A DNA stretch of 64,000 nucleotides from Podarcis muralis (GCF_964188315.1 NC_135670.1:4774001-4838000); one strand, 5' to 3'. Shown: positions 4,801-63,177, numbered from the stretch's first letter. The notes: generated from the letters alone by a model not told the origin. Numbers and translations: made by a program.

Positions 4801-7800
4801 TTGTTTACTTTCAATGGAGGATCACTCTTCATGCTGAATGTGGGGATTCATTCATCTGATTGGATTCTCCTCTAATAAAGGATGTGGGGGAGGAAGGGAA
4901 AGGACATTGTTAGCCGCTTTGAGACTCCTTAAGGTAAAAGTAAAGGGACCCCTGACCGCTAGGTCCAGTCGTGGCCGACTCTGGGGTTGCGGCGCTCATC
5001 TCGCTTTACTGGCCGAGGGAGCCGGCGTACAGCTTCCGGGTCATGTGGCCAGCAGGACTAAGCCGCTTCTGGTGAACCAGAGCAGCGCACGGAAATGCCA
5101 TTTACCTTCCCGCCGGAGTGGTACCTATTTATCTACTTGCACTTTGACGTGCTTTTGAACTGCTAGGTGGGCAGGAGCAGGGACCGAGCAACGGGAGCTC
5201 ACTGCCGACCTTCTGATTGGCAAGTCCTAGGCTCTGTGGTTTAACACACAGCGCCACCCGTGTCCCTTAATTAAATACTACAGTGGTTCCCCGGGTTACA
5301 TACGCTTCAGGTTACAGACTCTGCTAACCCAGACATAGTGCTTCAGGTTAAGAACTTTGCTTCAGGATAAGAACAGAAATCGTGCTCCGGCTGCGCGGCA
5401 GCAGCAGCAGGAGGCCCCATTAGCTAAAGTGGTGCTTCAACACGCCACCCTTGAGACTCCTTAAGGCGAGTGAAAGGCAGGATATCAAGTCCAAACTCTT
5501 CTTCTTCTTCTTGCGAGAGGGAGTTCCGTAGTTTAACCCACGCACTGCGTGAAGAAACATGCAGGAGTGTTCCTGCATCCATGTCTTCTCTGCAAGTTTC
5601 CCTTTCCGGTGTCTGCTCATCCACTGTGAGAACAGCATGCTGGATTAGATGAGCCACTAACCTCACCCAGCTAGAGGGCTCTTCTGACTTTCTTATGGAA
5701 CCTCCAGCTCCAGTAGCAGTCTATCTCGATCCTTCGTTCTCGGGGGCATTCGGCCACTGCGAGACCAGGACGCTGGAATAGACTGGGGCCTGATCCAACA
5801 GTGCTCTCCTGACGTTCCGATGTAACACGGATCATTCTACTCACCAAGCCGGACGTGACCAGGTGACTGATGACCACCAACGCCAGAGTCCAGTAGCGGC
5901 CCTTCTCGCAGGCGTCAAAGAAGATTGTGCCCCAGAACGTGTGTAGGAAAACCAGCGCCATCGTGAGGAAGGCTGGAAGGAGGAGGGCGGGAGAATGGTC
6001 AAGCCATATTGCGTCAAGTACGATTTACGCTGTTTCTCAAAATCGGTGGTTTGGCAGTCTGTTCCGTGTGGACAGTGCCAGTTTAGAGAAACATTTGACA
6101 ATCTTTTTTGGACTGTCAAGTGGCCAGCAGCCCAGGTAGGGCTGCGATTGTCCCATTACTGGAGAGCCTTTATTAGTCAGGGTGGAGCAGGGCAGGGGAA
6201 AGTTTGGCCATCCAGATAATTTTGGACAGCAACTCCCATTAGCCAACAATCAGAGATGATGGATGCGTGTTTTATTTAATCTACTGTTAAACATATATCC
6301 TTCCTCCCAAAGGCAGGAGTGATTGGACTTCTTAAAATCAATCCCACTACACACCGAAGACTAGGAAAGATCTCTTCTAGACAAAAAAAAGGTTATTTAC
6401 GTATGCTACTACTACTGCGGCCCGTGTTTCGTTAGCCCCAAAATGGAAAACGAGCGAGGTCCCAAGCAAAGAAGAATGGGAACTTAAACTGATGGAATAC
6501 AGTATGCGCAGCTTGCAGACCTAACTTATAGCATAAGAGAACAAGAAGAACATATGTATAAAGAAGATTGGAAAACGTTTATTGAATATGTGGGGGGAAT
6601 TTGAAAATGCTGGCAGCATTAAGATAAATTCAATAGTGTAAATAAGCTTTGATGGGGGCAATAATAGAATACTGAATGGTTTCGTTTTTATAAAATGCAG
6701 GGATTTATGTTATGCAAAATGAACCATGGAAAGAGAAGAAGGGAAGTCATTGATATTTTAAGCATGTTTAAATGAATGTTTTAAATTGTAAAATTTATAA
6801 ATAAAAGGAAAGATCTGTTCTTGGACAGCTTGCAGGAAGGGGAAGGTACGCAGCATGCGCCAAAAACTCAACAGAGAAAGCACCTCTCCAATATTTAGCA
6901 GGTCAGAATTCCAAATGAGAGATGCCACAACCTTGAAGGCCCTGTTTCTCTATTGCAGGCACCCCCAAACTTGGCCCTCCAGATGTTTTGGGACTACAAT
7001 TCCCATCATCCTTAGCTAACAGGACCAGTGGCCAGGGATGATGGGAATTGTAGTCCCAAAAAACATGTGGAGCGCCGAGATTGGGGATGTCTGCTCTATT
7101 GTATGGAATAGGCCTCCTGATAAGCTGGTTATCCTCACCTGTGGAGTGCAGGTGTCTGTCAGGTATATAAGGGCTGAGACCATTCTACATGTTCTCTTTT
7201 AGGATTCTAGAGGGCCATAGGTTTCCCCCACCCATAGGGAACACTGAGAACTTAGATGGACCCCAGAGGTCAATGGCCTTCCTATGTCCCCGAAAGTCAC
7301 CTTAAGTGATTTTTTTTATTTTTATTTTACCAAAAACCAAAAAGTGAAAACAAACAATGAAACCCCCCAGGTGGCTGATACGTTGGGTATACATAATCAA
7401 TGATAACATATTCAAATCAACTATATGCACAATTCTATATACCTTAACACTCCTCTCTCCACAAGGTTTATCTAATTTTTAACATTTTAATTGCCCCAAT
7501 TTGTTCAAACCTGCCCAAATAATTCAGTATCTTCTCAAACCAATCCTCCTCCTTCTCACTGACCTTAAACCCTTTCATTTTTTGTATCTTCACAGTTAGA
7601 TATTCTAGGATTATAATATTTTTCAATTTTTCCCTCCATTGGTTCACCCCTAGCTCTTCTGCATTTTTCCAGTTACTCGCTATAACCTGTCTGGCTGCAA
7701 TTACCATCAATTTTACCCATTTACAATTCTCTTTTGTTTCTAACTCGGTGCCACTCAGGCTAATAAGAACCATTAATTTAGATATTTCCACCTTCCTACC

Positions 7801-10800
7801 CACAATTCCTGATATTTCTATACCAATCTGTTTCCGGAATTCATTAACTAACAGACAATCCCACCACATATGACCCACCACTCCACATTTCATCCAGCAA
7901 TTCTTACTCCCAGATTTTGTAATATGATATAACCTTACAGGTGTGTAATACCTGAAGTGATGAAGTAATGGGGCGAATCTCCATGGATTCCCACGGTGCC
8001 TGGTCCAATAGAGTCTGCAAGGATGTTGATGACGGAGAAGACCCCGCTGATTATTCCAAAGGAGAGACCCGACACTGCGGAAGAGAGTACGAAGGACAAA
8101 CCAAATTTCACAGCACTCTGAGAACGTTTATTGCTATGCCGTGCCTCATTGTACAGGACATCACTTTCCAAACTAGCAGCCACCAACGTGAGAGCCGTTT
8201 ATAATGGAATTTGCATGCACAGAGGAAGGACAACTCAAGAGGTCTGAATAAGTCAGCTAGAAAAATTAACCAATAAACTGAAACTGACACGGGGACAAAC
8301 AGAAGACGACGCCTTTACCCCGGTATGGCTCCCCTTTATCACATACACAGCCCAACAAGACAACGACAATAATCCACCAACAGCATACAAATCAATAGGG
8401 CTAACCTGATCCAAAACACCCACCCGCCCCACTCACACACGAAAACAAAGATCACCACAGCCAATCACAAACAAACAACCACGCCCTAGGCCAGGGGTCT
8501 GCAACCCGCGGCTCCGGAGCTGCATGTGGCTCTTTTACACCTTTGCCGTAATACTAGCGGATACTAGCGAGGGGAGGAGGCACATTGTGCGCCCCGACAC
8601 TCCCCACTGTGGCAGGCGCTGTACTGGCTGTGACGTTGCATGGGGGCGGTGCGTGCGTTAGTCACGCACCGTCCCTTGTAAGGGGCATGTACACTGGTCA
8701 CTGCATTGAAAGGGGGCATGTACGCTGGTCACTGTTTTGAAGGGGAGTGAAGAACACACACACAAAAAAAGGTAACTTGTTAATTTAACGTTTATTTCTA
8801 TGAGGAGGAGTAATTCTGAGGGGTCAAACAAAGAAATAATTTTAAAAAGTGATAAAAAAGTTATTTTTATAATGACGAGTTTTGCGGCTCCCAGTTTTTT
8901 TCCCTTTGGAAACGGGTCCAAGTGGCTCTTTTTGTCTTAAAGGTTGCAGACCCCTGGCCTAGGCCAACCGCAACCTCTCTCACCACCAAAGGAACACAAG
9001 TGAACAGTACAAGCAATGCTGATACCAAACCCTACATTCATTAAGCATAACAGAAACATCGCCACCCGACTCCACCCCCACCCATCTTCCCTCCCTCCAC
9101 CCCTTCTTTTTTTTCTCCCCCTAATGTCTCAACAAATGAAACGGATTTGTAAAAATGTTACATGGAAAAAATATGAGAGACATTACACTTACTTCTGTAA
9201 AACAAGAAAACCTTTAATAAAAAATTTAATAAATGAATGAATGAATGAATAAGTCAGCAAAGTTGTTATTTCACTTGGGAGGGGCCGCTGTGAAAATGGA
9301 ACTTTAAAGGAAACCAAATTCTGAAGTGTGAAGGGCTTCTGCTTTAGCTTTGTCGGTTACAGGCGGCTGCTTTTTAAGGCCAGAAAAGGGCTCTTGGTCC
9401 AAGCTAGCAAAAAAAAAAAAAAAAAAAAAAAAAAGGGACATCTGGATTCTACAAGGAGGAACAGTTTCAGTGACAGTTGTGGCGCACGTAGGGAGACAGA
9501 CATGCAGGAAAGGGAACAGCCAGCAATTCGCTCACCATATGCCATCTGCTTGATCGAGATGGGAGACCGGCCGTCTTCGCTGATGGTCACCAGCCCTTCG
9601 TCAGCTTTCCTGAGGGCAGGATGCAAAAAGAAAGCAGGAAATGGGTCGGCGGTTTGTGAGGCAGAGACAGTCATGAGATTTTTATAGCATAGAGTTGGAA
9701 GAGGCATCAAAGGTTGGGTAGCCCAACCTCTGGCAATGGAGGAATCACAACTAAATAATCCCCGACTGCCTCTTTAAAAACTTCCATGTTTACCCAACAG
9801 CTCCTCGGTTCCGACTCTTTAATTTTGTTTTTCTTTTGAATCATACTCCATTTTATTTGCGATGCACTGCTGCATTTCCCCCTGCCATCTTTTATTTAGG
9901 AAATTTCAGTGAGCAATTGTTTTCCATTTGTTTATTAGTTTTATCTCACAGTATCTCCTTTTATGAACAGACTCCAATTTTATGTTTTGATTTATTGTAT
10001 CCTTTGTGCGTATATAAAGGAGATGGATGGATCAATTTACTTTTATTTATTCAACAAGGTTTATACACACCACTTGATTGTAATAAAAAACCTTTGAGTG
10101 GTTTCTTTTTTTTAAAAAAAAAGGACGCCGCATTAAATTTATCAATAAAAGACCATTATAAAAATGGACCACAGAAAGAGGGAGAAGGAAGTCAAATTTT
10201 GAAGTGTTAAATTGATTGTAAAACTAATGGAAGGCATAAATTTGAAAAGTATAAATAAAAAACTAAAATAAAAATTGGCAATATTTGCCACAGCTTAGCA
10301 AGGCACTCTTACTTGAGGAGCTTGAAGTACGCGAAGCGGAAGGCTTCCTGGAGCAAGACCGAGACAGCCGCCCCGAACATCAAAAGGCCGTACTGTAAAC
10401 GCCCATCTTCCCGGTCGCTCAGATGCACCGAAATAAACCATATCAAAGAGGCCAGGAGCAGGGAGACCAGCCAGAAAAAGGCCCTGGATAGACAACGAGA
10501 GAAATAAAAGGACATTAACTGTTATCAACCGGTATCTTGGTTCTCAAACTTAATCCGTTCCGGAAGTCCGTTCCAAAACCAAAGCGTTCCAAAACCAAGG
10601 CACGCTTTCCCATAGAAAGCAATGCAAAATGGATTAATCCGTTCCAGACTTTTAAAAACAACCCCTAAAACAGCAATTTAACGTGAATTTTACTATCCAA
10701 CGAGACCATTGACCCATAAAATGAAAGGAATAATCAATGTACTGTGCTATAAAATAAATAAGACAGTATTTCAGGTGATAAAAATTAAATTTTACTTTTT

Positions 10801-26625: not shown

Positions 26626-28779
26626 TCGATGCTGTTTGTAACGGTAATGAAATGTTGGTAGTCTGACTGGGCAGGAAGGACCCCTCGTAGCTCAAAATGG
26701 CCTGCTAAGTCAACCTGAATTGTTGAATTGTTTTCCCTGCTCCGCCAGGGGGGAAAACATTCTGCCTCTCTCATAAACAATACCTAGGAGAGAGAAACGG
26801 GGGAGAAACTTGACCCAGTTTGCATTTAAAGTGGAACCGAACTAATTTGCACTTCCCAAAGCAATCTGCAAACTGCACCTAGCCATCGTCTGAAATTTGC
26901 ATTTGCACTCTAATTTTCCAATGCGGTTCTCTTCTCATGTAACGTGTGCAAAATAAAAAAAAATTAACATACATGTATTAGGGTAACCTGCGCAGGAAAC
27001 TAATTCTGAAATAGTGTTCCAGGGTCGAGGGGGAGTTAATTCATATTTATACTTAATATTAATTTTGCAAAGCAGTTTCTTATGGAGAGAAATTAATATT
27101 CATTTGGTTTGAAAATTAAAAAGATAAAAAAAAGCATAAAAATGAGGCTATTACTGAAAGGTTTGTTTTATTGATTGATTTCATAAAACTTCTGTGCCTG
27201 TTTGATTGTAAAGAACCTCAAAGCAGTTTACAAAAAGAATAACAATAAAAAAGTGTGAGTAAAAACAGCTAAAAACATTACTTGAAACATTCAAAAAGAT
27301 TAAAATCAGACTGAAACACACATTCCCTGTTTAGGGAAGTTTTTAATGTTTAATGCTGTACAGTATTGTGTTTTTAATATTTGGTTGGGAGCCGCCGAGA
27401 GTGGCTGGGGAAACCCAGCCAGATGGGTGGGGTATAAATAATAAATCATCAACATCATTCTACAAATTCAGAATGAGTATTCCGTAGCAATCACATTGCA
27501 GTATATTGCTTTGTAAAAAATAATTATGTGCATATTAGGCAAAATTGCATTCTAACCTATGTATATTAGGATAAATTTGCACCAAAATGCTGATTTATTT
27601 TCAAGACTCTCAATCTGATGTGGAAATTTAGAGAAGTGGGAACTGAAGATTGAGAAAGGGATAAACTGAGAGAAACACAAATTAAAGGAGTCTCCCTTCC
27701 TCAATGGCACATAAAACTGGGCTATTGGAATATGCTGCAGGCTGCAGCCCTTACAAAAATTTCCCTGGGTGTCCATCATTCAGAATGATTTCTCTTTTTT
27801 ACAATCAATTTTATTAAAGGTTTTCCAACATGTTATACAATTAAAAACAAACTGATCAAGAAAGAAATAATAGAGAACAATGCATAAAAAAAGGAAAGAA
27901 GGAAAAAGAGAAAAATAAGAAAATAAAATAGTAAAAACCACCATAATAGTAATGATCCTAATAAAACACATTTTATATTTTTTACAATTTTATTAAAGGT
28001 TTCCCAACATGTTATACAATAAGAAGCAAACTAATCTAGAAAGAAATAATAGAGAACAGGTTAGCAAAGGGTATTAAATTCAGGAATCTCTTTTTCTACT
28101 TCTCCACCTTCCTTCTGTAGACTCCATGTTTCTTCTTAGCTGCTGTGACCTATTCAGCTTGGAACAGAAAACAGAAAGGTCAAAAGGCAGATTCCAGAGG
28201 GATGCTTTGTTAGGGACGAAGGACGAGAAATCACCTGGAGAGGTTTAGAGTGGTTCTTGAGATAATAATAATAATTTAATAATTTATTATTTATAACCCC
28301 CCCCCCCCATGTTGGGGGACCCGGACCGCTTTGGACATACAGTGGTACCTTGATTGTCAAACTTAATCCATTCTGGGAGTCCGTTCGACTCCTGAAACCG
28401 TTCGAAAACCAAGGTGCAGCTTCCTGCACTCAACCGGAAGCTGCGTTGGACGTTCCAAAAAACGTTCGCAAACCGGAACACTCACTTCCGGGTTTGCGGC
28501 GTTCGGGAGCTGATTTGTTTGACAACTAAGCCATTCGGGAACCAAGGTACCGCTGTACTTCAGATCCAAGTTGTTTCTTTGTTTGCAACTCCCCACTCCT
28601 GCAAAAAACACACCCCCAAACTCCATTTTAGCCTGACTGATGTCAAATCTCTGACCGGGACAGAGAGTTGGAAGTTCCTGCAACAATAGGAGGGGGGGGG
28701 GGTCAGATCTAAGACCCTATTTGCTAATGCTGCACATCTGGGACCAGAGTATTGCAACCTTAGCTGTCTTCCCCCCTCC

Positions 28780-29147
28780 TCTCCCATGTCAGCCAGTGAA
28801 GAGAAAGAAACGGCCTTGGTCCAGTACATCTGAAGGAGCATCTCCACCCCCATCGTTCTACCCGGACACTGAGGTCCAGCTCCGAGGACCTTCTGGCGGT
28901 TCCCTCACTGCGAGAAGCCAAGTTACAGGGAACCAGGCAGAGGGCCTTCTCAGTAGTGGCGCCCACCCTGTGGAACACCCTCCCACCAGATGTCAAAGAG
29001 AACAACAACTACCAGGCTTTTAGAAGACATCTGAAGGCTGCCCTGTTTTGGGAAGCTTTTAATGTTTGATGTATTATAGTATTTTAATATTCTTTTGGAA
29101 GCCGCCCAGAGTGGCTGGGGAAGCCCAGCCAGATGGGCGGGGTTTAA

Positions 29148-29185
<38 letters not shown>
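28780..29185 (+). mobile_element. L2/CR1-clade LINE 3' fragment with (TTA)n tail
   Basis: Homologous to 2040-2480 in reverse orientation. Confidence 0.8.
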
Positions 29186-29186
<1 letters not shown>

Positions 29187-29239
29187 TAACCCACTGAATT
29201 CTATGGGGTTCACCTGCCCTTCTCCCCACCAGCAGTTTC

Positions 29240-32200
29240 CTATAGGGTCTCCCTCTTTGATCCTTGGTTTGCTGGTGATTCTGTGTTCCCAGGGAGGCAT
29301 AGAAAGGCTTCGATGGGCTGGGTTCAATGCAGCCCTGCTTTTTCTTTTCCTTTTCCTTTTTAAAATTAATTTTTAATTTTTTTTACCAACAACCAAAACA
29401 CAAACAGTGAAAGCCCAACAGGCGGCTGATACATTGGGTATACATAATCAATAATAACATATTCAAATCAACCATATGTTCAATTCTATATATATTAACA
29501 CTCCTCCCTCCACAAGGTTTATTTAACTTTTAACATTTTAATTGCCCCAAATTGTTCAAACCTGCCCAAATAATCCAATAGCGTCTCAAACCAATCCTCC
29601 TTCTCACTGACCTTATACCCTTTCATTTTGTGTATCTTCACAGTTAGATATTCTAAAATTATAATATTTTTCGGTTTCCCCCTCCATTGGTTCAACCCTA
29701 GCTCTTCTGCATTTTCCCAATTACTCGCTATCCTGCTTGCAAACACATAATTACCTCTGCCCAAACGCTTTCTGAAGCAGAGGACCAGCGGTGGGATCCA
29801 CAGGATGATGACCAAGCAGGGAACTCTATAATACAATGTAAGGAAGCAGGTTCCTGCTAAAAGAAGAACACAGAGAAACAGCAGTGTTAAGCCGAGTAAC
29901 CCATGGACCCAGGTTCTCACTGAGACTGGTAGGGCGGAAGGCAGGGAGGCCACCAGCAGGTGGCGCCAGAGCCAGTGGCAATCAGAGCCAACTAATCCCA
30001 GCTTTGCCTCCACCTTCCTCTTCCCTCCTGAGTTCCATAATGGCAACCCCGAGTCCACTTATAGTCCCTGCCACAATTTGCAGTGAGGGAACACCTAGAA
30101 GGGCTCTCTTTGTGGCCCTGACTCTGGAACAGTCTCCCCCATAGACTTCTGCCTGTCTCGCACCTTGCTGGTCTTCAGATGTCAGCGTGAACGACATTTC
30201 TAACACATCCAAACTTGCACAGTTTGAGATTATGAGATGTTTAGCCATCGGTAGCAATGTGAATCAGTGGTTTTCTTTTTTTAACGATTAGTCTGAATAT
30301 GCTTTTTATTTTATTTTCAGTATTTGGTTTTTAGTATATTGTTGTGACAATGCCACCCCCCCCCCCCCAGCTATTCTGGAGGAAGGGTGATTTGTAAGTA
30401 ACATAAATAAAATAAAGATATAGGTTGGTGTCTCTTGGCAGCTTGAGATGGAGGGTAGCGCTGGGGTCTTAGGGGGATTGTGGATTACTTAATTTCCTTT
30501 AAAATGGTGTGTGTGTGTGTAAGCCATCTGTCTTGTATTTGGGGACCCCTTCACAGACCGCAGAGGCGCCTAGACTTGTGCCTCACATTCTTGCCCTGAC
30601 GGCACTGCTAGAAGCTCTACGCTATCTTCAAATTCTAACCATAAAAGGGTGTGCTTGTGTAGCACAACATGCCCTGGAAAATGGTCTGGAATAGCTATAT
30701 TACAGTGGTACCTCAGGTTAAGAACTTAATTCGTTCCGGAGGTCAGTTCCTAACCTGAAACTGTTCTTAACCTGAGGTACCACTTTAGCTAATGGGGTCT
30801 TGCGCCACTGCTGCTCGGCTACTGCGCAATTTCTGTTCTCATCCTGAAGCAAAGTTCTTAACCTGAAGCACTACTTCTGGGTTAGGGGAGTCTGTAACCT
30901 GAAGCATCTGTAACCTGAAGCTTATGTAACTCGAGGTACCACTGTATATGCAAACTGAGCATGAAGCGGAGGGGCTGGCAACATTAACACCCCAAAAGAT
31001 ATTGCTGCTCCGTTATTCACCCTTTGGATCCAATGCAGAGCAGGTAAGTCTTTGTATCGCCAGCTTCCAGCCTGATTTCTACTCAGCTTTCCAAACCACT
31101 CTCTTTCTTGCAATGGTTCACCTATCTAGCAGCCAGGTGAGGGGATGGGAAGGCACATTCACTCATTCTATGGCACAGAGCAAATTATTTGGTTACGCTA
31201 ATCGTGGTGTGAGCCACAACCACTGCCCAGACAAAGGGACTGGTTTGAAAAACTTGCTCTCATCACTTCTATGACCCAAAGTGCAGGAACCCAAGAATTG
31301 GAAGGGACTCATGGCATCATGCAGTCTGACCCCACAAACTCACAACATCACTCTACCTGCCGACACTGTGTTCAAAGGGACCACTGCACTGATATTTCTT
31401 TTCTCCTGGTCTGAACAGGAATAAGCCACCCCTTGGCTCCATCTCTCTTGAGGAATCAGTTTCAGACTCCAAATGGTGAAGTCTCCTTCCCCATCGATCA
31501 TGTAACCATCCTTCTGGTCCTCAGAGGTTTCCCCACCAATATCCCAGGAGAAAGTATCCTCATCAGGGTTTGCGTCAGTCAGGAGGCAGAGGAGGGGGAC
31601 GTGGTGGGAGAGCTCCGTGTCTTCTGCAGCGGAAGGAGCAAGGAGGGAAAGTCTTGGCCCAGAAGTTCCTAGGAGAGAAGGAGAATCGCATGAAATGGCT
31701 CATCAGATCTTTAATTAATCCCTCTCATAGGTTTCACAAGGGTGACATGGCTCCTCAACAAACTAGACCCAATAAACAGCCATCCCAATGACCGTTGCAG
31801 TAGTTAGAGTGTTGGACTAGGGCCTGGAAGAGACCTGGGTTCAAATCCCCATTCAGGAAGCTCGCTTTGGGCTGGTCTCAGCCTAGCCTCCCTCACAGGT
31901 TGCTGTGGGGATCAGTGAGGAGCAGCTGAACCAAGTGCAATACCTGGAGCTCCTTGGAGAAAAAAGGGTAAATGCAATAATAAATAAATAAAACAAATGC
32001 TACAGACCCTAAATTAAATCTAAGCCATAGTTGCTTAAACCTAGCCCTCCCAATATCTACTAGTAGTATAGTCGTACCTTGGTTTTCGAACAGCTTTGTT
32101 CTCGAATGTTTTGGCTCCTGAATGCCGCAAACCCAGAAGTGACTGTTCCGGTTTTCAAACATTCTTCGGAACCCGAATGTCTGACGGGTGTTCCGCGGCT

Positions 32201-35200
32201 TCCGAACCTGAGCTTCCTGCAGCCAATCAGAAGCTGCACTTTGGTTTCTGAACGTTTTGGAAGACGAACGGACTTCTGGAACGGAGTCTGTTCGACTTCC
32301 AAGGTACGACTGCATTAGTATTAACAAAAGCTAAAAACAAAAAAGGCAAGAGAGCTTGTTTAAAGAAGTGGAAGCTTCGTCCAGACATGGATTGGAGCAG
32401 GGTAGAGAGAGACCCACAAAGCAAAATTAACAGAAGATAAGTTTTGGGGAGCAGAATGCTTAACAGATTAGGACAAACAAATAAAAATGTCTTTAAATAT
32501 ATCTGCGGCAGGAAGCCAGGCAGGCAGGCAGGTGCGGCAGATAACAAAGCTGTGAAAGGGTTAACTAAAAGGTGTTGGGGAGATTGCAAAGAAACTCAAT
32601 TATTTTGTGGGCCTTCACTTGAGGAGATATTGGGCAGTTATATGTGTGCTGTTCTTTGAAACTTGCTAGCGGCCTATGGCAGGTTTGCAAGTGGACTGGG
32701 TGTATATTAAATAAGCAACAAGAGCATTTGACATCTGCTGAGCCACTCACCTAAGACGATCAGCCTCACCCCACTCAGGAAGGTGAATTTCTGATGCATA
32801 GCTCCAGCACAGTAATACACCCCAGAATCTCTTCCCTGGACATTGTGTCGGGTCAGATTCACTTGGCTTGGGGTTTTTGCTCCTGGTTTTTGAGTGGTAT
32901 AAATGTCTGCAATCTTACGCAGTCCCCCTTCCTGTTCCTCTTTGTACCAGCTCACTACCGACATAAAAGTTTCTTCTGGAATGTTGCAGCTGATGTTGAC
33001 AGTGGCGCCAGGAGGTGCTGAGATCCTTGCCAGCCTCTGCGGGAATTCGGTGATCCCCTGTGATCCAGCAGCTGCAGCAGGGAAGCAAAGGGATGTGTGG
33101 TTGGTCCCATTTGGTTGGTCCCACTAAACTGAAAACCAAGATGACCACCCCATAAAACATTTCTTTTAAAATAGAGTGCATATGACAGACCTGTTTGCCA
33201 CTTCCCCCTTTCCCTGCCCCTGTCTGGATTGTTACTTGATGGGGGGGGTAGGATACAGAAGGATTACTAAATCTTAAGAAAAATATGCACACACACAAAT
33301 AATGACATGTTGAATTTTTCAACTTTCAACTTCGAAAAATGAGGGGTGCTGAAAAGTTGTAACATAACTTGAGAATTCAAAAGATATTTAGGTTAAATTA
33401 ATATAATTTAGTTTTGCTTGGTAAGTAAAATAATTGCCATGCACTTGCAGTTATATTTATTATTATTAATTATTCCCTGCTGCTGCTGCTGCTAATTCAG
33501 CATTACTTGACATTTTCAGAAGGAAAAATTAATGTTATCTGGTTTTCTGAAAGCAGTTTATGTGCTTCTTCATCAAACGTAGCCTTACCAAGCTAAATGT
33601 TGTTGGTCACAAAATAATGGCAGATTTGAATTCCCCACACACCAAAACATAGTTTGCAAAATTTATGTTTTACCCCCTAAAATGAGATGCACTGCGAGTG
33701 TCACCTGGCATCAAAAATTTTACGTTACATAATTAGAAACTACTGTAATTCCAGGCAGATTTCTTGTGGGGAGCAACTGCCCTGCCAAACAAGTGTGCTT
33801 AAGAAACTTTATAAACTGAGAGCTGCAAAAAGAAAACCAACCTCCTTTTTGCTCCTTAGGGAAGGAGACATGTCAATCAAGTTCCTAAACCAGGTTCCAA
33901 ATAAGAAACTTCAAATATTTATTCAATGTGTGCAGAGATAAATATGCTTTACTGATTACTGAAACTGAATCAGTAGATTGTACTATATAGAATTAAATAT
34001 GTGTTTCTTTTTGCCAAGTTAAAAGAAATGGCACTCATCGTTTAATTGAAGCACTATTGTCTTGCTATTTGTCAAGACTCTGCTGAAGATTTGGGAGAGA
34101 AGTTTGTTGAGCTTTCATTTTAATGGGAACCAACCTAATTTGTGCTTCCTGAAAACATAAACAGATTGAAACACAGCATTCCTACAAAATTCACATTACT
34201 CTGAATATTTCAGGGTAGTTCTCCAACCAAAAAGTGTGCAGGTATACGTGAAAACAATGAAAACAAAGCTACGTTATGTTATGGGAAATTGCTTGCAAAA
34301 ATGCACATGTTTTGCAAAATTGTTCACAAATACACATGTGTTATACAACCGGCATTGGTATTATTAATTCACATCACAAATTTTGGTCTATGGGTCTTTG
34401 GCGACAGTCAGTTTCATGCATTTTAAGGGCAGTGCTTATTCTTTAACCATGACTTGAGGCATCCAAGCAAAGCTTTACTTAATGCCCTAGGTAAGGTGGA
34501 ATATTTGTAGCACACTATCTTTTTTTGCTTTAAAAATGGGAATGCAAGAACACAAATATTCTGATTTGAATAAGCTCTAAAAGAAATTAAGCTATAATGA
34601 TTTGGACTGCAGGTATTCAAGGGTTTTGCAAACTGTACTTCTTGAAAAGACTTTTCATAAAGTGAAAATATCTAAACAGNNNNNNNNNNNNNNNNNNNNN
34701 NNNNNNNNNNNNNNNNNNNNNNNNNNNNNNNNNNNNNNNNNNNNNNNNNNNNNNNNNNNNNNNNNNNNNNNNNNNNNNNNNNNNNNNNNNNNNNNNNNNN
34801 NNNNNNNNNNNNNNNNNNNNNNNNNNNNNNNNNNNNNNNNNNNNNNNNNNNNNNNNNNNNNNNNNNNNNNNNNNNNNNNNNNNNNNNNNNNNNNNNNNNN
34901 NNNNNNNNNNNNNNNNNNNNNNNNNNNNNNNNNNNNNNNNNNNNNNNNNNNNNNNNNNNNNNNNNNNNNNNNNNNNNNNNNNNNNNNNNNNNNNNNNNNN
35001 NNNNNNNNNNNNNNNNNNNNNNNNNNNNNNNNNNNNNNNNNNNNNNNNNNNNNNNNNNNTTAATTCTTACATAAATACTGAGGCACATGCTTGTTCGGTA
35101 CTTTTATATGTAAATGTCTGGCTCATGTAAGCCTTTGCAGTACATTTATTCTTAAACAATGATATAACGCACAGGTGGATAATACTTTTATTTTTATATA

Positions 35201-35392: not shown

Positions 35393-35779
35393 GATAGAAA
35401 GATATAACATGTTCAAAAAATATACATTTACGCAAGCCGCATTAGATATAACAAACTATGAATATTGAAATGATTTTTCTGAAAACTATAGGAGACATTT
35501 TTGTTTTTACAAGTTTCCCTGCCTGGGTGAAAGCCTCTCCCTGCCTTAGGGGTTATTCTGTCTTGTTTTTAAACCTAATTTTATTGTGTGTACTGTTTTA
35601 AAAACTAATTCTACTTGTTTTTATGTAAATCACATAAAACGCCTGCTGTTTCTTGAGGTTTTGCTGAACATAAGCAATGGATGTGAGAAGAAACTTTTAA
35701 AGAGATCCTATTTAAAAAGCAAAAAATTGTACATACTATGCAGAAGGAGCAGAATCATCGCTGCAAAATGCAAGACCAT
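29240..35779 (-). CDS. Gene D: non-rearranging VJ-C1 IgSF receptor, type-2 chain, TM Arg, short tail; 3' end uncertain
   Basis: Leader 35779-35737 (MVLHFAAMILLLLH); V 33071-32751 (NISC..VSWYK..DSGVYYCAGAMHQKFTFLSGVRLIVL); C1 31668-31357 (PLLCLL..FSW..AYSC); CP/TM 29856-29755 (AGTCFLTLYYRVPCLVIILWIPPLVLCFRKR); probable last exon 29280-29240 (ESPANQGSKRETL*). Intron 1 spans the assembly gap. Confidence 0.82.
29340..29730 (-). mobile_element. L1-like 3' fragment filling the intron after the gene D TM exon
   Basis: Near-identical to 7315-7690; starts about 25 nt after the donor at 29754. Confidence 0.8.
29953..29966 (+). promoter_or_regulatory. CTCF-like motif
   Basis: CCAGCAGGTGGCGC matches the core consensus CCASYAGRKGGCRS at 14/14. 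Confidence 0.5.
30703..30944. mobile_element. Tigger-like MITE
   Basis: CAGTGGTACCTC...GAGGTACCACTG; TA TSD. Confidence 0.85.
34361..34597. repeat. Intron-1 block shared by genes D and E (paralog 51291-51531)
   Basis: Highly similar ~235-bp segments at equivalent intronic positions. Confidence 0.85.
34680..35059. other. Assembly gap (380 N)
   Basis: Run of n within gene D intron 1. Confidence 1.
35345..35395. repeat. (GATA)n microsatellite
   Basis: Direct reading. Other microsatellites: (TG)n ~1773-1793, (CA)n ~21190-21225 and ~38288-38313, (GAT)n(AAT)n ~47282-47343. Confidence 0.95.
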
Positions 35780-41500: not shown

Positions 41501-42334
41501 CATGGGGTCGTCTGCTTTGGGGCAGGGGCCTGGTAGGAATTTTGCCATTTGGCTGATTAGTGTGTGCCACTTGGTTTTTGCCTACTGCGTAGCAAACCGT
41601 CATAACTTGTAAGGTTTGCGGTTAGGCATTGGTCTTAGAATTGGTTGCTGGGGGGGTATGGATTCGGCTGTGCCTGCCCCCCAAAATGCTGCTGCTGGTG
41701 GAGGGGTATGGATTCGGCTGTGCCTGCCCCTCCAAAATGCTGCTGCTGCTGCTGAAGGGTTTTACCGTTAAAGGAACCCAGGGGCTCCCCATGCTTTTGT
41801 CCGAAACCCCCTGGCAAGGGGCTAGGGCCACGCAAGCTCCTGGGAGCATGCTGGGGAGAGGTGAGGCATGGTTCCCAGTCCCGTCCCTCTCCCCAGGTGA
41901 CTTACCCTTTCTGACTTCGCAGGGGGTGCGAATGTCAGAGCTGTCCCCAGGCGGGGTCAGTTAGTGCTACCAATGCCTAAGCAACCACTCACATTGCTGT
42001 AATTTGAATAAAGTTGTGGCCAAAATTGTGCCAAAAACCTTAAACAAAATTAAGTGTCAATTGTGTTTTTCTTTGGGGGGGGGGGTGTCTTCGGGACCTC
42101 GACGCGCAAATCAGAAGTGAAACAAAGAGCTAGAGAGACTGTTAAGACTTCTCTGTCCAGAGAAGGAAGTCCTAAGAGAACTGATATGATGTTTCTTATC
42201 TTTGTAAAATTTCCCCTGTAGATGCAGAGATTCCTCAGTGCCTCTTCAGATATACGTGGGTCCTGGATACACTGACGTTGCTGCTGCTTCCCCTAAACTT
42301 CCTTTGGATTCAATTCTACCCTTCCGACTCCTAA
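38579..42334 (+). CDS. Gene B: non-rearranging VJ-C1 IgSF receptor, type-1 chain, TM Asp, essentially no cytoplasmic tail, 267 aa
   Basis: Leader from second ATG 38579-38615 (MPLTAYLFLFST; the first ATG at 38550 is frameshifted); V 39188-39532; C1 40421-40729; terminal CP/TM exon 42222-42334 (YAEIPQCLFRYTWVLDTLTLLLLPLNFLWIQFYPSDS*), alignable to the TM exons of A and C. Confidence 0.8.
39745..39909. mobile_element. hAT MITE, same family, nested in a Tigger-like MITE
   Basis: Perfect 8-bp TSD AGTGAGTG. Confidence 0.9.
40864..41010 (-). mobile_element. tRNA(Ile)-derived SINE
   Basis: Minus strand TAGCTCAGCTGGCTAGAGCATGGTGCTGATAATGCCAAGGTTGCGGGTTCGATCCCCGT followed by a CR1-like tail. Related tails at ~17040, ~47075 and ~54595. 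Confidence 0.65.
41290..42110 (+). mobile_element. Probable LTR-type insertion in the gene B C1-TM intron; boundaries uncertain
   Basis: LTR-like composition, internal ~50-bp direct repeat at 41651-41752, AATAAA near 42007. No TSD identified. Confidence 0.4.
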
Positions 42335-45491: not shown

Positions 45492-47305
45492 CTAGGTGGC
45501 CCTTTGGGATTGCAACACTGCAAATCTACGAAAGTCTCCGTTTTGCTTTTCTTTCTTCATTGCTCCAGTTTGATCTGGATTCCATTTGTTGCAACGTAGC
45601 TCTGCATACTCTGTCTGGAAGAGAAGGAAGCAGAGCAGTTATAGGCTGCTCACTCGTTGTAAAAGTTGATTTCCCACATCTGTAAAATCAAACGAACTTT
45701 TGATGTTTTTACTAGAATGTTTATCTCTTTTGCATGAATGGGTGTTGGGGGAAAAATGGTAATTTTTTTGGGGGGGAAACAAAAAACTTCTTAGTTACCT
45801 TGGGTAGTTTCTACGAGAAAGTTACTTACAGAGAAGGATATATTCAAAGTTGAACATCAAAGGCCTAATAATGATGTTAATGTTAATTAATAAGAATTTG
45901 TATCCAAGAGAATTCTACTCCGAGTAGTCTCAACTACCACCATCCTTAATCACTAAAGGTAAAGGTAAAGGTACCCCTGCCCGTACGGGCCAGTGGTGTC
46001 CGACTCTAGGGTTGTGCGCCCATCTCACTTAAGAGGCTGGGGGCCAGCACTGTCCGGAGACACTTCCGGGTCACATGGTCAGCGTGACAAAGCTGCTCTG
46101 GTGAGCCGGCACCAGTGCAGCACACGGAAACGCTGTTTACCTTCCCGCTAGAAAGCGGTACCTATTTATCTACTTGCACTTAGGGGTGCTTTTGAACAGC
46201 TAGGTGGGCAGGAGCTGGGACCGAAAGATGGGAGCTCACCCCGCCTCCTTAATCACTACCCATCATCAATAAACATTTCCTGGGCAGCTTGCAAACCACA
46301 TTTAAACACTCAGTTCAGGAAAGCTTCAGTGCCTGGTCACCTGGATACCATTTTCCCTCACCACAAGCCTTTTCACATCCAAAAATCCTCATTCAAATGC
46401 AACCCACACTTCTGCACTACCTAGGGTTGCCATATTACAGAAATCTGGACAGAATTGTTCACTCTTTTTTTTGCAAAATAATAAAAAAGAGGTATTAGAG
46501 CTATTTTTTCCAGAAATTGCCAAAATTGCCACTACCGGTATGCTCTCTCTGTGTGTCTGCCTATCTGCCTCCTGGGTTCCTGGGTTGCCCAAAATTAGGA
46601 CTGGTTCCTTCCAAACCCTCCTGCAAAATACAGGAACACACATCTTTCTGAAATTTCAGTATGCAAAGCCAGAATTTACCTGCGGGATCTCCCTCATGGG
46701 TATTTGGTTTCCTGGTTTCTCTGTATTCCCTGTGAGGAAGGAAAAAAGAAGGGACGTTTTATTGGTCTACTCAGAAGCAAGTTCCTTCAACTTCCGTGGG
46801 ATTTCCTCCTGGCTCCCAGTGTGCCTCACACACTTCAAGGCCCCTTGAATAACGACCCGCAGTTTATCTTACAAAAGGATTACCTGTGTGAAGAAGTTTT
46901 CTGAAGAATAGGGCAGAGAGCGAGATCAGGAGGATGACGCTGACAACGCAGGGCACCCCAAAATATAGTATGGAGACGCAGTCATCTGTCAATGAGAAGG
47001 AGAGGGAAACAGGGGTCAGCAACTAGACCGGCCATTGGCAGAGAACAATGTTAAGCAAAGACTCTACATTTCATAGAATCACAGAACTTCAGAGCTGGAA
47101 GGTACCCATGGGGTCATCTAGACCAACCCCCAGCAATGCAGGAATCTCAACTAAAGCATCCAAAATAATGTCCTCTTAGCTACCCAAAAGCAACAAGACT
47201 GGGGTGCTGCCTGTCCTGGGATGACCAGAGGAAACATTAGGAAACCGGGGTTGCCACGCGCCTGGATTTTCCCAGACAAAAATGATGATGATGATGATGA
47301 TGATG

Positions 47306-62250: not shown

Positions 62251-63177
62251 ATTTATGCCCCCTCTTTCCTTCAAGAGGTCCAAGGTGGTGTACATCGTTC
62301 TTCTCCTCCCTCCCCTTTCATATCCCTCACAACAACCCTGTGAGGGAGGTTAGCTTGAGAGCAAATGTCTGGCTCTCAAGATCACAACCAGTGAGTTTCA
62401 TGGCCCTGTGGGAGGATTTGAACCCTGGTCTCTCCCAGACTAGGAAGCAGAGTATCATAAGAAGAGCCTGCTAGGTCAAGCCAATGGCCCATCTATTCCA
62501 GCATCTATTCCACCCAGGTGGCAGAAATTTAGCTGAACTAACTGTCCTTCTGGCATCAACATAAAATCACCATCATGCTAGAGTCTTTAGCTGGCCCTGT
62601 TCATGGAAGCACAGAGAAAAGAAAGCGGAAACAGAGTTCTAGGTGGCTCTTTGCGGTCCGGCTCTGGGTGACGCTGACCGCAGGGACGTCATGGGTCCCT
62701 GCTTACGAACCTCGGTTAGAGGCGCCTTCGGTTTAAAAAAAAGCCAAGCGCCCGCCTGAGTCAATCTTTCTGTTCTTTTGGTTTTCTGCCCTTCTTGGTT
62801 TTGACACCCCGTGTTCTTCACTTGCAAGAACAATAAAAACAGGAAGCAAAAGTTTGTGTGGCTTTGGCCTGGCCCCGCTTTATAGCTGCGACACTCCAGG
62901 TGTGAGGAGAATCGCCTCTCTCGCCTCGCCTCCGGCAGCCAGGCCTGACAAGGCTCCCAGTGGCCCGGTGTTGTAAGCACAATGAGCAAATAAATTCAGC
63001 TGGGCGTCCCGAGAGAAAAGCTGAAAGGCAGGACAGGGCGGGAAAGACTAACGGATAAGAGGAAACTGCCCTTTTGGTTTCACTCCGGCTGGATTTAGAC
63101 GCATCAAAGAAGCGATTCAGTTAAACGCGTTGCAGACTTTGTATGAGAAATCGGGTTGGCAAAAAGGGGACTCCACA

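What the first reader, a model, noticed from the sequence alone, without database searches (positions are those of the whole stretch)
29240..29291. Readable mutational scar of tail loss in gene D
Seen: 29289-29240 aligns with the gene E 50-nt tail exon (E: cacag|GG AAT ACA GAG AAA CCA GGA AAC CAA...ATC CCG CAG|gtaa; D: ccctg|GG AAC ACA GAA TCA CCA GCA AAC CAA...ACC CTA TAG|gaaa). In D the acceptor AG has become TG, the last codon CAG has become TAG, and the donor GT has become GA. An in-frame cryptic acceptor (ACACAG, exon from 29280) gives ESPANQGSKRETL*. Inference: D derives from a long-tailed ancestor and was converted to a short-tailed form.
Basis: partly seen in the sequence, partly recalled or inferred. 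Interest (0 to 1): 0.7.

Follow-up and report, generated by a model that had tools for sequence, protein, structure and literature searches.

The report
Dead tail exon in lizard receptor
A wall-lizard immune-receptor gene still carries the decayed remains of a 50-base exon that once encoded part of its signalling tail, which shows that this short-tailed, probably activating receptor descends from a long-tailed one, a route already known from mammalian paired receptors.

Summary
Window 29289-29240 (minus strand) is homologous to the 50-nt cytoplasmic exon of paralogs E and F (z = 11-16 over shuffles). It lies in the expected place after gene D's transmembrane (TM) exon. TG replaces the acceptor AG and GA replaces the donor GT.

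The window is Podarcis muralis, and D is LOC144325824 (XP_077776605.1, 261 aa). The same relic occurs in the D orthologs of P. lilfordi, Lacerta agilis and Zootoca vivipara.
- Both splice-site losses are shared by all four species, so they are old.
- The TAG is found only in Podarcis, so it is later decay and did not cause the tail loss.
- P. lilfordi also has a 1-nt deletion in the relic.

Iguanians, geckos and turtles all have the long tail (…NQIPMREIPQ-TEYAEL…), so the long form is ancestral.

The annotated models in three species skip the relic. They join the TM exon to an exon at 28157, giving …GR-AE*. That exon appears to be the former ITSM exon, with a stop at the ITSM tyrosine codon.

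D also has a TM arginine, and its V exon is homogenised with that of F. This is the KIR-like route from inhibitory to activating receptor, here in an unnamed sauropsid V-C1 family. No RNA reads could be obtained.

The parts
29240..29289 (-). Relic (pseudo-exon) of the 50-nt cytoplasmic tail exon of gene D.
   Evidence: It matches E's exon at 36/50 and F's at 33/50. Scores are z = 11-16 over shuffles. It is conserved at 90-94% among four lacertid D orthologs. Annotated models skip it.
29290..29291 (-). Former 3' splice acceptor, now TG instead of AG.
   Evidence: TG in D of P. muralis, P. lilfordi, L. agilis and Z. vivipara. AG in all E and F copies and in Sceloporus.
29238..29239 (-). Former 5' splice donor, now GA instead of GT.
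   Evidence: GA in all four D orthologs. GT in all E, F and Sceloporus copies.
29240..29242 (-). TAG in place of the exon's last codon CAG. This is a late change specific to Podarcis.
   Evidence: TAG in P. muralis and P. lilfordi. CAG in L. agilis and Z. vivipara D, and in all working copies.
29755..29856 (-). Transmembrane exon of D. It has an intact GT donor at 29754-29753, a NAGNAG acceptor (isoforms X1 and X2), and an arginine inside the membrane span (LYYRVPC).
   Evidence: P0036 residues 226-259 map at 100%. It aligns to E's TM exon. The Arg is present in all four D orthologs, where E and F have Gly. dN/dS among orthologs is 0.2-0.5.
29340..29740 (-). Repeat-element insertion in the intron between the TM exon and the relic. 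It is found only in Podarcis.
   Evidence: Present in P. lilfordi. Absent in L. agilis and Z. vivipara, where the flanks abut. A second copy of the same element's ORF lies at 7468-7893.
28807..29187 (-). SINE-like repeat with an (ATT)n run just 3' of the relic. It is found only in P. muralis.
   Evidence: Absent at this site in P. lilfordi, L. agilis and Z. vivipara. Other copies occur in the window.
28150..28157 (-). Coding start of D's real terminal exon, CT GAA TAG, read as ...G|CT GAA TAG = Ala-Glu-stop. The acceptor AG is at 28159-28158 and the stop at 28152-28150.
   Evidence: It gives exactly the C-terminus of P0036 (...GRAE). The same exon is used in the L. agilis model (AK*) and the P. 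lilfordi model. It aligns with the ITSM exon of F, with the TAG on the Tyr codon. That alignment scores z of about 5.5-7.8 with LASTZ-type scoring but is not significant with +1/-1 scoring.
27989..27994 (-). AATAAA, a likely polyadenylation signal for D about 160 nt after the stop.
   Evidence: Read from the sequence. Its function is inferred.
31357..31672 (-). C1-like domain exon of D.
   Evidence: P0036 residues 121-225 map at 100%. It is 93% nt identical to F's exon.
32749..33069 (-). V (germline-joined VJ-like) domain exon of D.
   Evidence: P0036 residues 16-122 map at 100%. Pfam V-set match. It is 95% nt identical to F's V exon in the same species but 85% to Zootoca's D.
35738..35779 (-). 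Leader exon of D.
   Evidence: P0036 residues 1-14 map at 100%.
46680..46729 (-). Working 50-nt tail exon of paralog E (GNTEKPGNQIPMREIPQ), used as the comparison.
   Evidence: AG and GT flanks are intact. It is used in the P. lilfordi E model P0001.
45492..45614 (-). ITSM exon of E (TEYAELRCNK...). In P. muralis the usual TGA is TGG, so the frame runs on to 45492.

Best explanation
Gene D (P. muralis LOC144325824) is the short-tailed, activating-type member of a tandem family of non-rearranging V-C1-TM immunoglobulin-superfamily receptors. Its long-tailed members (E, F) end in a 50-nt exon followed by an ITSM exon (TEYAEL/V).

**What happened in the D lineage.** Before Podarcis, Lacerta and Zootoca separated, four changes occurred:
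1. The 50-nt exon lost its acceptor (AG>TG) and its donor (GT>GA) and became a skipped pseudo-exon.
2. The TM exon came to splice directly to the former ITSM exon, through an AG that lies 1 nt further 3'.
3. The codon aligned with the ITSM tyrosine became TAG, so the protein now ends two residues after the TM exon (...GR-AE*).
4. A glycine inside the membrane span became arginine. This residue type lets activating receptors bind ITAM adaptors such as FcR-gamma or DAP12.

**What followed.** The relic has since drifted neutrally. It gained a TAG in Podarcis and a 1-nt deletion in P. lilfordi, and repeat elements inserted on both sides of it. D's V exon is kept like F's by gene conversion, while its TM exon evolves as a conserved ortholog.

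**Shown versus inferred.**
- Shown: the relic's homology, the state of its splice sites in four species, its absence from annotated mRNAs, the long tail in outgroups, the TM arginine, and the mosaic identity pattern.
- Inferred: actual splicing in vivo, homology of the last exon (statistically supported only under one scoring scheme), adaptor binding, and activating function.
For: - **Relic homology and position:**
- **Splice sites:** both losses are shared by four D orthologs. The TAG is Podarcis-only, and P. lilfordi has a frameshift.
- **Annotated proteins:** P0036 and P0037 (P. muralis), P0038 and P0039 (P. lilfordi) and P0002 (L. agilis) end GRAE or GRAK. P0036 maps 100% to the window with its terminal CDS at 28157-28150.
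- **Long tail is ancestral:** NQIPMREIPQ-TEYAEL-type tails occur in Sceloporus, Phrynocephalus, Pogona and two geckos, and in the three turtle hits I read.
- **Terminal exon:** it aligns with F's ITSM exon, with the TAG on the Tyr codon and the acceptor shifted 1 nt. At most 1 of 400 shuffles reaches the score.
- **TM arginine and mosaic:** the Arg is in all D orthologs. V exon identity D-F within a species is 95%, against 85% between orthologs. TM exon identity is 89-97% between orthologs, against 55-57% for D-F.
- **Constraint:** TM exon dN/dS is 0.2-0.5.
- **Precedent:** activating KIR arose from inhibitory KIR by a TM lysine plus a stop codon inside the ITIM (PMC2213150). Homogenisation of only the ligand-binding domains of opposing receptor pairs is also described (PMC3210942).
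Against:
- **Last-exon homology is scheme-dependent.** It is not significant with simple +1/-1 scoring. It is significant only against F, not against E or Sceloporus. Part of the match is polypyrimidine tract, which any acceptor would have.
- **Zootoca models differ.** The Zootoca models that use D's exons (P0034, P0035) end by read-through after the C exon and have no TM exon.
- **Sampling is shallow.** All four species are Lacertini, so the order of the four old changes cannot be resolved.
- **Function is untested.**
Confidence: 0.8

Rival explanations
1. The relic is still partly coding: D uses the internal AG at 29282-29281 as a cryptic acceptor and ends ...GR-ESPANQGSKRETL*.
For: The AG exists. 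The frame from the TM exon is open for 13 codons and ends at the TAG. The TM exon's donor is intact, so some downstream acceptor must be used.
Against: - No annotated isoform in P. muralis (X1, X2), P. lilfordi or L. agilis uses it.
- The frame is not conserved. P. lilfordi has a 1-nt deletion, and Lacerta and Zootoca have no TAG and would read on into the intron.
- The stretch before this AG is purine-rich (gggaacac). The acceptor at 28158 follows a pyrimidine run of about 80%.
Confidence: 0.08
2. D as a whole is a decaying pseudogene, and the relic is just one of many lesions.
For: - The tail is lost, and repeats have inserted in the 3' intron.
- Zootoca D has a 4-codon deletion in the C exon, and its annotated models lack the TM exon.
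Against: - The leader, V, C and TM exons are open and spliceable in P. muralis and map 100% to a RefSeq protein.
- Open V, C and TM exons also occur in P. lilfordi and Zootoca, and open C and TM exons in L. agilis.
- TM exon dN/dS is 0.2-0.5.
- The TM arginine, the new acceptor and the stop are conserved in four species.
Confidence: 0.07
3. D's terminal exon at 28157 is a newly recruited intronic acceptor, not the former ITSM exon. On this view the old ITSM exon was lost or decayed beyond recognition. The relic reading stands, but the 'stop on the tyrosine codon' is coincidence.
For: With plain +1/-1 scoring the match is no better than shuffles. There is no significant match to E or Sceloporus. 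Acceptor regions resemble each other in any case.
Against: - With transition-aware scoring the best local alignment falls exactly on F's ITSM acceptor in two species, at z of about 5.5-7.8.
- The alignment is ungapped. By my count from the alignment, 14 of 17 mismatches are transitions.
- The exon is the first one after the relic, at a distance comparable to that in F and E.
Confidence: 0.3

Closest known systems
Short-tailed activating KIR (KIR2DS/3DS) derived from long-tailed inhibitory KIR (Abi-Rached & Parham 2005, PMC2213150)
   Same: Activation-type features arose from an inhibitory-type gene through a few point changes. A basic residue was introduced in the TM, and a stop codon fell inside the tyrosine motif of the tail. 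In D, the Arg is in the TM and the TAG aligns with the ITSM tyrosine codon.
   Different: - The family and fold arrangement differ: V + C1-like domains here, against two or three C2/I-type domains in KIR.
- The host is a reptile.
- The motif is a single ITSM-like TEYAEL, not two ITIMs.
- D also lost a whole 50-nt exon by splice-site death and uses an acceptor shifted by 1 nt.
Merohomogenization of paired opposing receptors (NKG2A/C/E, KLRI, PIR; PMC3210942)
   Same: Ligand-binding exons are more alike between the opposing paralogs within a species than between orthologs. The signalling (TM and tail) exons behave as orthologs. D and F show this pattern: 95% against 85% for V, and 55-57% against 89-97% for TM.
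   Different: Here it is shown only by identity matrices for three or four species. Conversion tracts were not mapped, and the ligands are unknown.
SIRP alpha/beta, PILR alpha/beta, LILRB/LILRA and chicken CHIR-A/B paired IgSF receptors
   Same: They follow the same logic: shared ectodomain, ITIM/ITSM tail against short tail plus TM Arg or Lys. The nearest language-model neighbour of D is a SIRP-beta-like cluster (score 0.96).
   Different: No orthology is shown. D has one V and one C1-like domain, whereas SIRP has V-C1-C1. By sequence, D's best solved-structure matches are antibody heavy chains. The family is unnamed and is annotated only as 'Ig gamma-1 heavy chain-like' or 'TCR alpha chain MC.7.G5-like'.

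Membership tests
Paired activating/inhibitory IgSF receptors | The short- and long-tailed members share closely related ectodomains. | tested here: met
   D and F are 95% nt identical in the V exon and 93% in the C exon in P. muralis.
Paired activating/inhibitory IgSF receptors | The long-tailed member carries an ITIM/ITSM tyrosine motif. | tested here: met
   TEYAEL in E (window 45614 onward) and TEYAEV in F. The motif is conserved in squamate and turtle homologs.
Paired activating/inhibitory IgSF receptors | The short-tailed member lacks the motif and has a basic residue within the TM helix. | tested here: met
   P0036 ends ...FRKRLGRAE. The Arg in LYYRVPC is present in four orthologs, where E and F have Gly.
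Paired activating/inhibitory IgSF receptors | The short-tailed member associates with an ITAM adaptor and delivers the opposite signal. | not testable with these tools
   This needs co-precipitation and signalling assays.
Pseudo-exon (exon death by splice-site loss) | It is homologous to, and positioned like, a working exon in paralogs. | tested here: met
Pseudo-exon (exon death by splice-site loss) | Both splice sites are non-consensus. | tested here: met
   TG and GA in four species, against AG and GT in seven working copies.
Pseudo-exon (exon death by splice-site loss) | It is absent from mature transcripts. | tested here: inconclusive
   It is absent from the annotated models of three species. 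RNA reads could not be obtained.
Pseudo-exon (exon death by splice-site loss) | It decays without regard to reading frame. | tested here: met
   There is a stop in Podarcis and a 1-nt deletion in P. lilfordi.
Rearranging antigen receptors (Ig/TCR), as the database names suggest | Separate V and J segments are joined by recombination. | tested here: not met
   D's V exon runs uninterrupted through the J-like strand (...FLSGVRLIVLG) in germline DNA. I did not scan for recombination signal sequences.
SIRP family | V-C1-C1 ectodomain and orthology to SIRP genes. | tested here: inconclusive
   Only one C1-like domain is present. The resemblance is by language-model features only. Synteny with SIRP was not examined.

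The most novel reading that the evidence does not exclude
The head-to-head gene pairs in this cluster (D with B, E with C) may encode the two chains of a non-rearranging, TCR-like V-C1 heterodimer found in sauropsids. It would exist in an ITSM-bearing version and an adaptor-coupled version. D's dead exon, its stop on the ITSM tyrosine codon and its TM arginine would then record the switch of one whole heterodimer from inhibitory to activating, before the Lacertini radiated. A candidate B TM exon carries an aspartate.
Probability: 0.2. Interest if true: 0.6.

Novelty: new member of a known kind. Interest (0 to 1): 0.3.

Why it matters
This is a clean, datable reptile example of how an activating immune receptor is made from an inhibitory-type one. 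It combines exon death, a stop on the signalling tyrosine codon, a membrane arginine, and continued copying of the ligand-binding exon from the long-tailed partner. It shows that the route known from primate KIR and rodent Ly49/NKG2 was also taken in an unnamed sauropsid V-C1 receptor family.

It also corrects the gene's 3' end: the protein ends ...GRAE, not in the relic. Current database names for these genes ('Ig gamma-1 heavy chain-like', 'APH-1A isoform X1') are misleading. It does not open a new question or reveal a new mechanism.

Tried and rejected
- **Word-based protein search with D's TM exon.** It returned only one cluster and missed the L. agilis ortholog already in hand. Its silence about other species therefore means nothing.
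- **The large representative search, structure prediction and fold search.** Not used. The question did not rest on absence of relatives or on fold.
- **Plain +1/-1 local alignment of D's last exon against E and F.** It was not significant. The positive result comes only from the transition-aware matrix chosen afterwards. I report both.
- **UrIg (PMC12227049).** Considered as the family and rejected. It is elasmobranch and has a V-C1-C2-C3 arrangement.
- **Chance similarity and 'short form ancestral'.** Both rejected.
- **dN/dS rows for the C exon involving L. agilis.** My coordinates were out of frame, so those rows are void.
- **Spliced models.** I joined and searched none of my own. Whole-protein steps used database proteins (P0001, P0036 and others).
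- **N run at 34680-35059 (D's first intron).** Left untouched.

Full report
**What the window is.** The window is from Podarcis muralis. The last exon of protein P0010 (LOC114586931) matches window 63020-62883 at 100%. The RefSeq protein P0036 (XP_077776605.1, LOC144325824, 261 aa) maps at 100% onto the minus strand:
- leader 35779-35738
- V exon 33069-32749
- C exon 31672-31358
- TM exon 29857-29756

The window holds two kinds of V + C1-like + TM immunoglobulin-superfamily genes (Pfam V-set and C1-set):
- D (33.1-28.1 kb, minus strand) and E (50.6-45.5 kb, minus strand) are one kind.
- A, B and C are the other kind. B and C lie head to head with D and E.
- A third D/E-type gene, F (LOC114586931), lies just beyond the window's upper end (locus L003).

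**The family and its ancestral tail.** Homologs of E occur in lacertids, Sceloporus, Phrynocephalus, Pogona, two geckos and many turtles. The squamate full-length forms all end the same way. After the TM segment comes ...G-x4-P-x-NQ(I/L)P(M)RE(I)PQ, followed by TEYAE(L/V)-x-C-x-K and a stop.

In E these parts are the 50-nt exon 46729-46680 and the exon starting at 45614. In F they are L003 24043-24092 and 24684 onward. TEYAEL/V fits the ITSM pattern TxYxx(V/I/L). The long, tyrosine-bearing tail is therefore the ancestral state of the family.

**The observation.**
- D 29289-29240 matches E's exon at 36/50 and F's at 33/50.
- blastn between the two gene regions finds it at E = 8.5e-5, colinear with the V and C exon hits.
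- With LASTZ-type scoring, the relic and its flanks align to the 50-nt exon of E and F in P. muralis and Zootoca at z = 11-16. None of 400 dinucleotide shuffles reaches the score.
- The polypyrimidine tract before the exon also aligns.

It is a true relic, not a chance match.

**Orthologs.** I fetched the D locus of three further species:
- P. lilfordi (L004)
- L. agilis (L002)
- Z. vivipara (within L007)

All three carry the relic directly after a conserved TM exon. Alignment A6 shows:
- TG at the acceptor and GA at the donor in all four D genes.
- AG and GT in all seven working copies: E from three species, F from three species, and Sceloporus.
- The last codon is TAG only in the two Podarcis species. 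It is still CAG in Lacerta and Zootoca.
- P. lilfordi alone has a 1-nt deletion inside the relic.

Three conclusions follow. The substitutions are not assembly errors. The two splice-site losses predate the split of these three genera and cannot be ordered against each other with these species. The TAG is a later, neutral hit on an exon that was already dead.

Two repeats also entered the intron afterwards. One, at 29740-29340, is shared by the two Podarcis species. A SINE-like element at 29187-28807 is found only in P. muralis.

**How D really ends.** D's TM exon keeps a good donor (GAG|gtaatt), so it must splice onward.

The L. agilis model P0002 ends ...FRKRLGR-AK*. Its last two codons come from an exon at L002 14655 (ccaag|CAAAATAG). 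The same exon is conserved in the window at 28157 (ccaag|CTGAATAG). It gives ...GR-AE*, exactly the C-terminus of P. muralis P0036 and P0037 and of P. lilfordi P0038 and P0039. An AATAAA follows at 27994-27989.

That AG is an ancestral internal CAG present in every copy. The frame from it is broken in P. lilfordi and is not closed by a stop at that point in Lacerta and Zootoca. I rate it at most a minor isoform.

**Is the last exon the old ITSM exon?** In alignment A7, D's acceptor region and first codons align without gaps to the ITSM exon of F and E.
- D's AG lies one base 3' of theirs (ccAG|ACx against ccAAG|Cx).
- 50 + 1 = 51 bases are therefore removed, so the exon is read in its old frame.
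- D's TAG falls on the TAT/TAC tyrosine codon of TEYAEL.

The statistics depend on the scoring scheme:
- With a transition-aware matrix, the best local alignment of D (three species) against the 1.2 kb downstream of F's 50-nt exon lands on the ITSM acceptor in both P. muralis and Zootoca. Scores are z of about 5.5-7.8, and at most 1 of 400 shuffles reaches them.
- With +1/-1 scoring the same placement is found but is not significant.
- Against E and Sceloporus it is not significant.

I hold this homology at about 70%. Part of the signal is pyrimidine tract.

**Activating-type signature and mosaic evolution.**
- All four D orthologs have arginine in the membrane span (LYYRVPC), where E has LYFGVPC and F has LLIGIPC.
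- In P. muralis, D's V exon is 95% nt identical to F's. Zootoca D and F are also 95% identical. Orthologs across the two genera are only 85-86% identical.
- TM exons show the opposite pattern: 89-97% between orthologs and 55-57% between D and F.
- TM exon dN/dS among orthologs is 0.2-0.5.

This pattern has been described as merohomogenization of opposing receptor pairs (PMC3210942). The route of a TM basic residue plus a stop inside the tyrosine motif is the one reconstructed for activating KIR (PMC2213150). Adaptor binding by a basic TM residue is established for many receptors (PMC1440944 abstract). For D it is inferred only.

**Comparison with known families.**
- By sequence, D's closest solved structures are antibody heavy chains.
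- By language-model features, its neighbours are SIRP-beta-like, 'Ig gamma-1 heavy chain-like' and tapasin-related clusters.
- The V exon is germline-joined through its J-like strand, so this is not a rearranging receptor.
- UrIg (PMC12227049) is a different, elasmobranch, four-domain molecule.

I file D as a new member of the known kind 'paired activating/inhibitory IgSF receptors'. The family itself is unnamed as far as my searches went.

**Limits.**
Splicing therefore rests on annotation.
- All four D species are Lacertini.
Whole-protein searches used database proteins.

**Turtle caveat.** I fetched only squamate protein sequences, so the turtle tails were not read residue by residue. The statement that turtles share the long tail rests on their full-length size and query coverage, not on an inspected motif.

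**Verdict.** It is wrong on the order and role of the three substitutions and on how the transcript now ends.

Noticed in passing
window 45584-45492 (minus strand): In P. muralis E, the stop that ends the ITSM exon in P. lilfordi and Zootoca (TGA after ...RC-x-K) reads TGG. The frame therefore runs on for 30 more codons to a TAG at 45494-45492. This may be a stop-loss extension of the inhibitory-type tail.
   Followed up: partly
L002 10001-14662 (L. agilis) versus window D and E: The L. agilis gene at D's position has an E-type V exon (87% nt to E, 61% to D) joined to D-type C and TM exons. A second, degraded V-like stretch lies at L002 10604-10720. This suggests a recombinant or deletion-fused gene in Lacerta.
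   Followed up: partly
window 42185-42331 (plus strand): An open frame downstream of B's C1 exon reads like a TM segment with an aspartate (…VLDTLTLLLLPLNFLW…). The matching segments of A and C have no charge. If this is B's TM exon, B (Asp) and D (Arg) would carry opposite charges in the membrane.
   Followed up: no
window 5671-5961 and 7935-8186 (minus strand): These ORFs resemble the gamma-secretase subunit APH-1A. This probably explains why fused models of these receptor genes are named 'APH-1A isoform X1' in P. lilfordi and Sceloporus. It is a naming artefact.
   Followed up: no
L007 10001-56462 (Z. vivipara): Zootoca models P0034 and P0035 combine F's leader or V exon with D's exons across 46 kb. 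They end by read-through after D's C exon, without a TM exon. Zootoca D's C exon has an in-frame 4-codon deletion. These are either secreted isoforms or model artefacts.
   Followed up: partly
window 29853-29858 (minus strand): A NAGNAG tandem acceptor (agCAG) at D's TM exon accounts for RefSeq isoforms X1 (…VSAAGT…) and X2 (…VSAGT…).
   Followed up: yes
window 62883-63020 (minus strand): The last exon of the P0010 model of F lies here, about 4.4 kb beyond F's 50-nt tail exon (L003 24092 to 28475). It replaces the TEYAEV exon with an unrelated 46-residue end, while P0005, listed under the same gene ID LOC114586931, ends in TEYAEVRCKK (its V region matches L003 at only 83%). This is either an alternative 3' end or a model artefact.
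   Followed up: no
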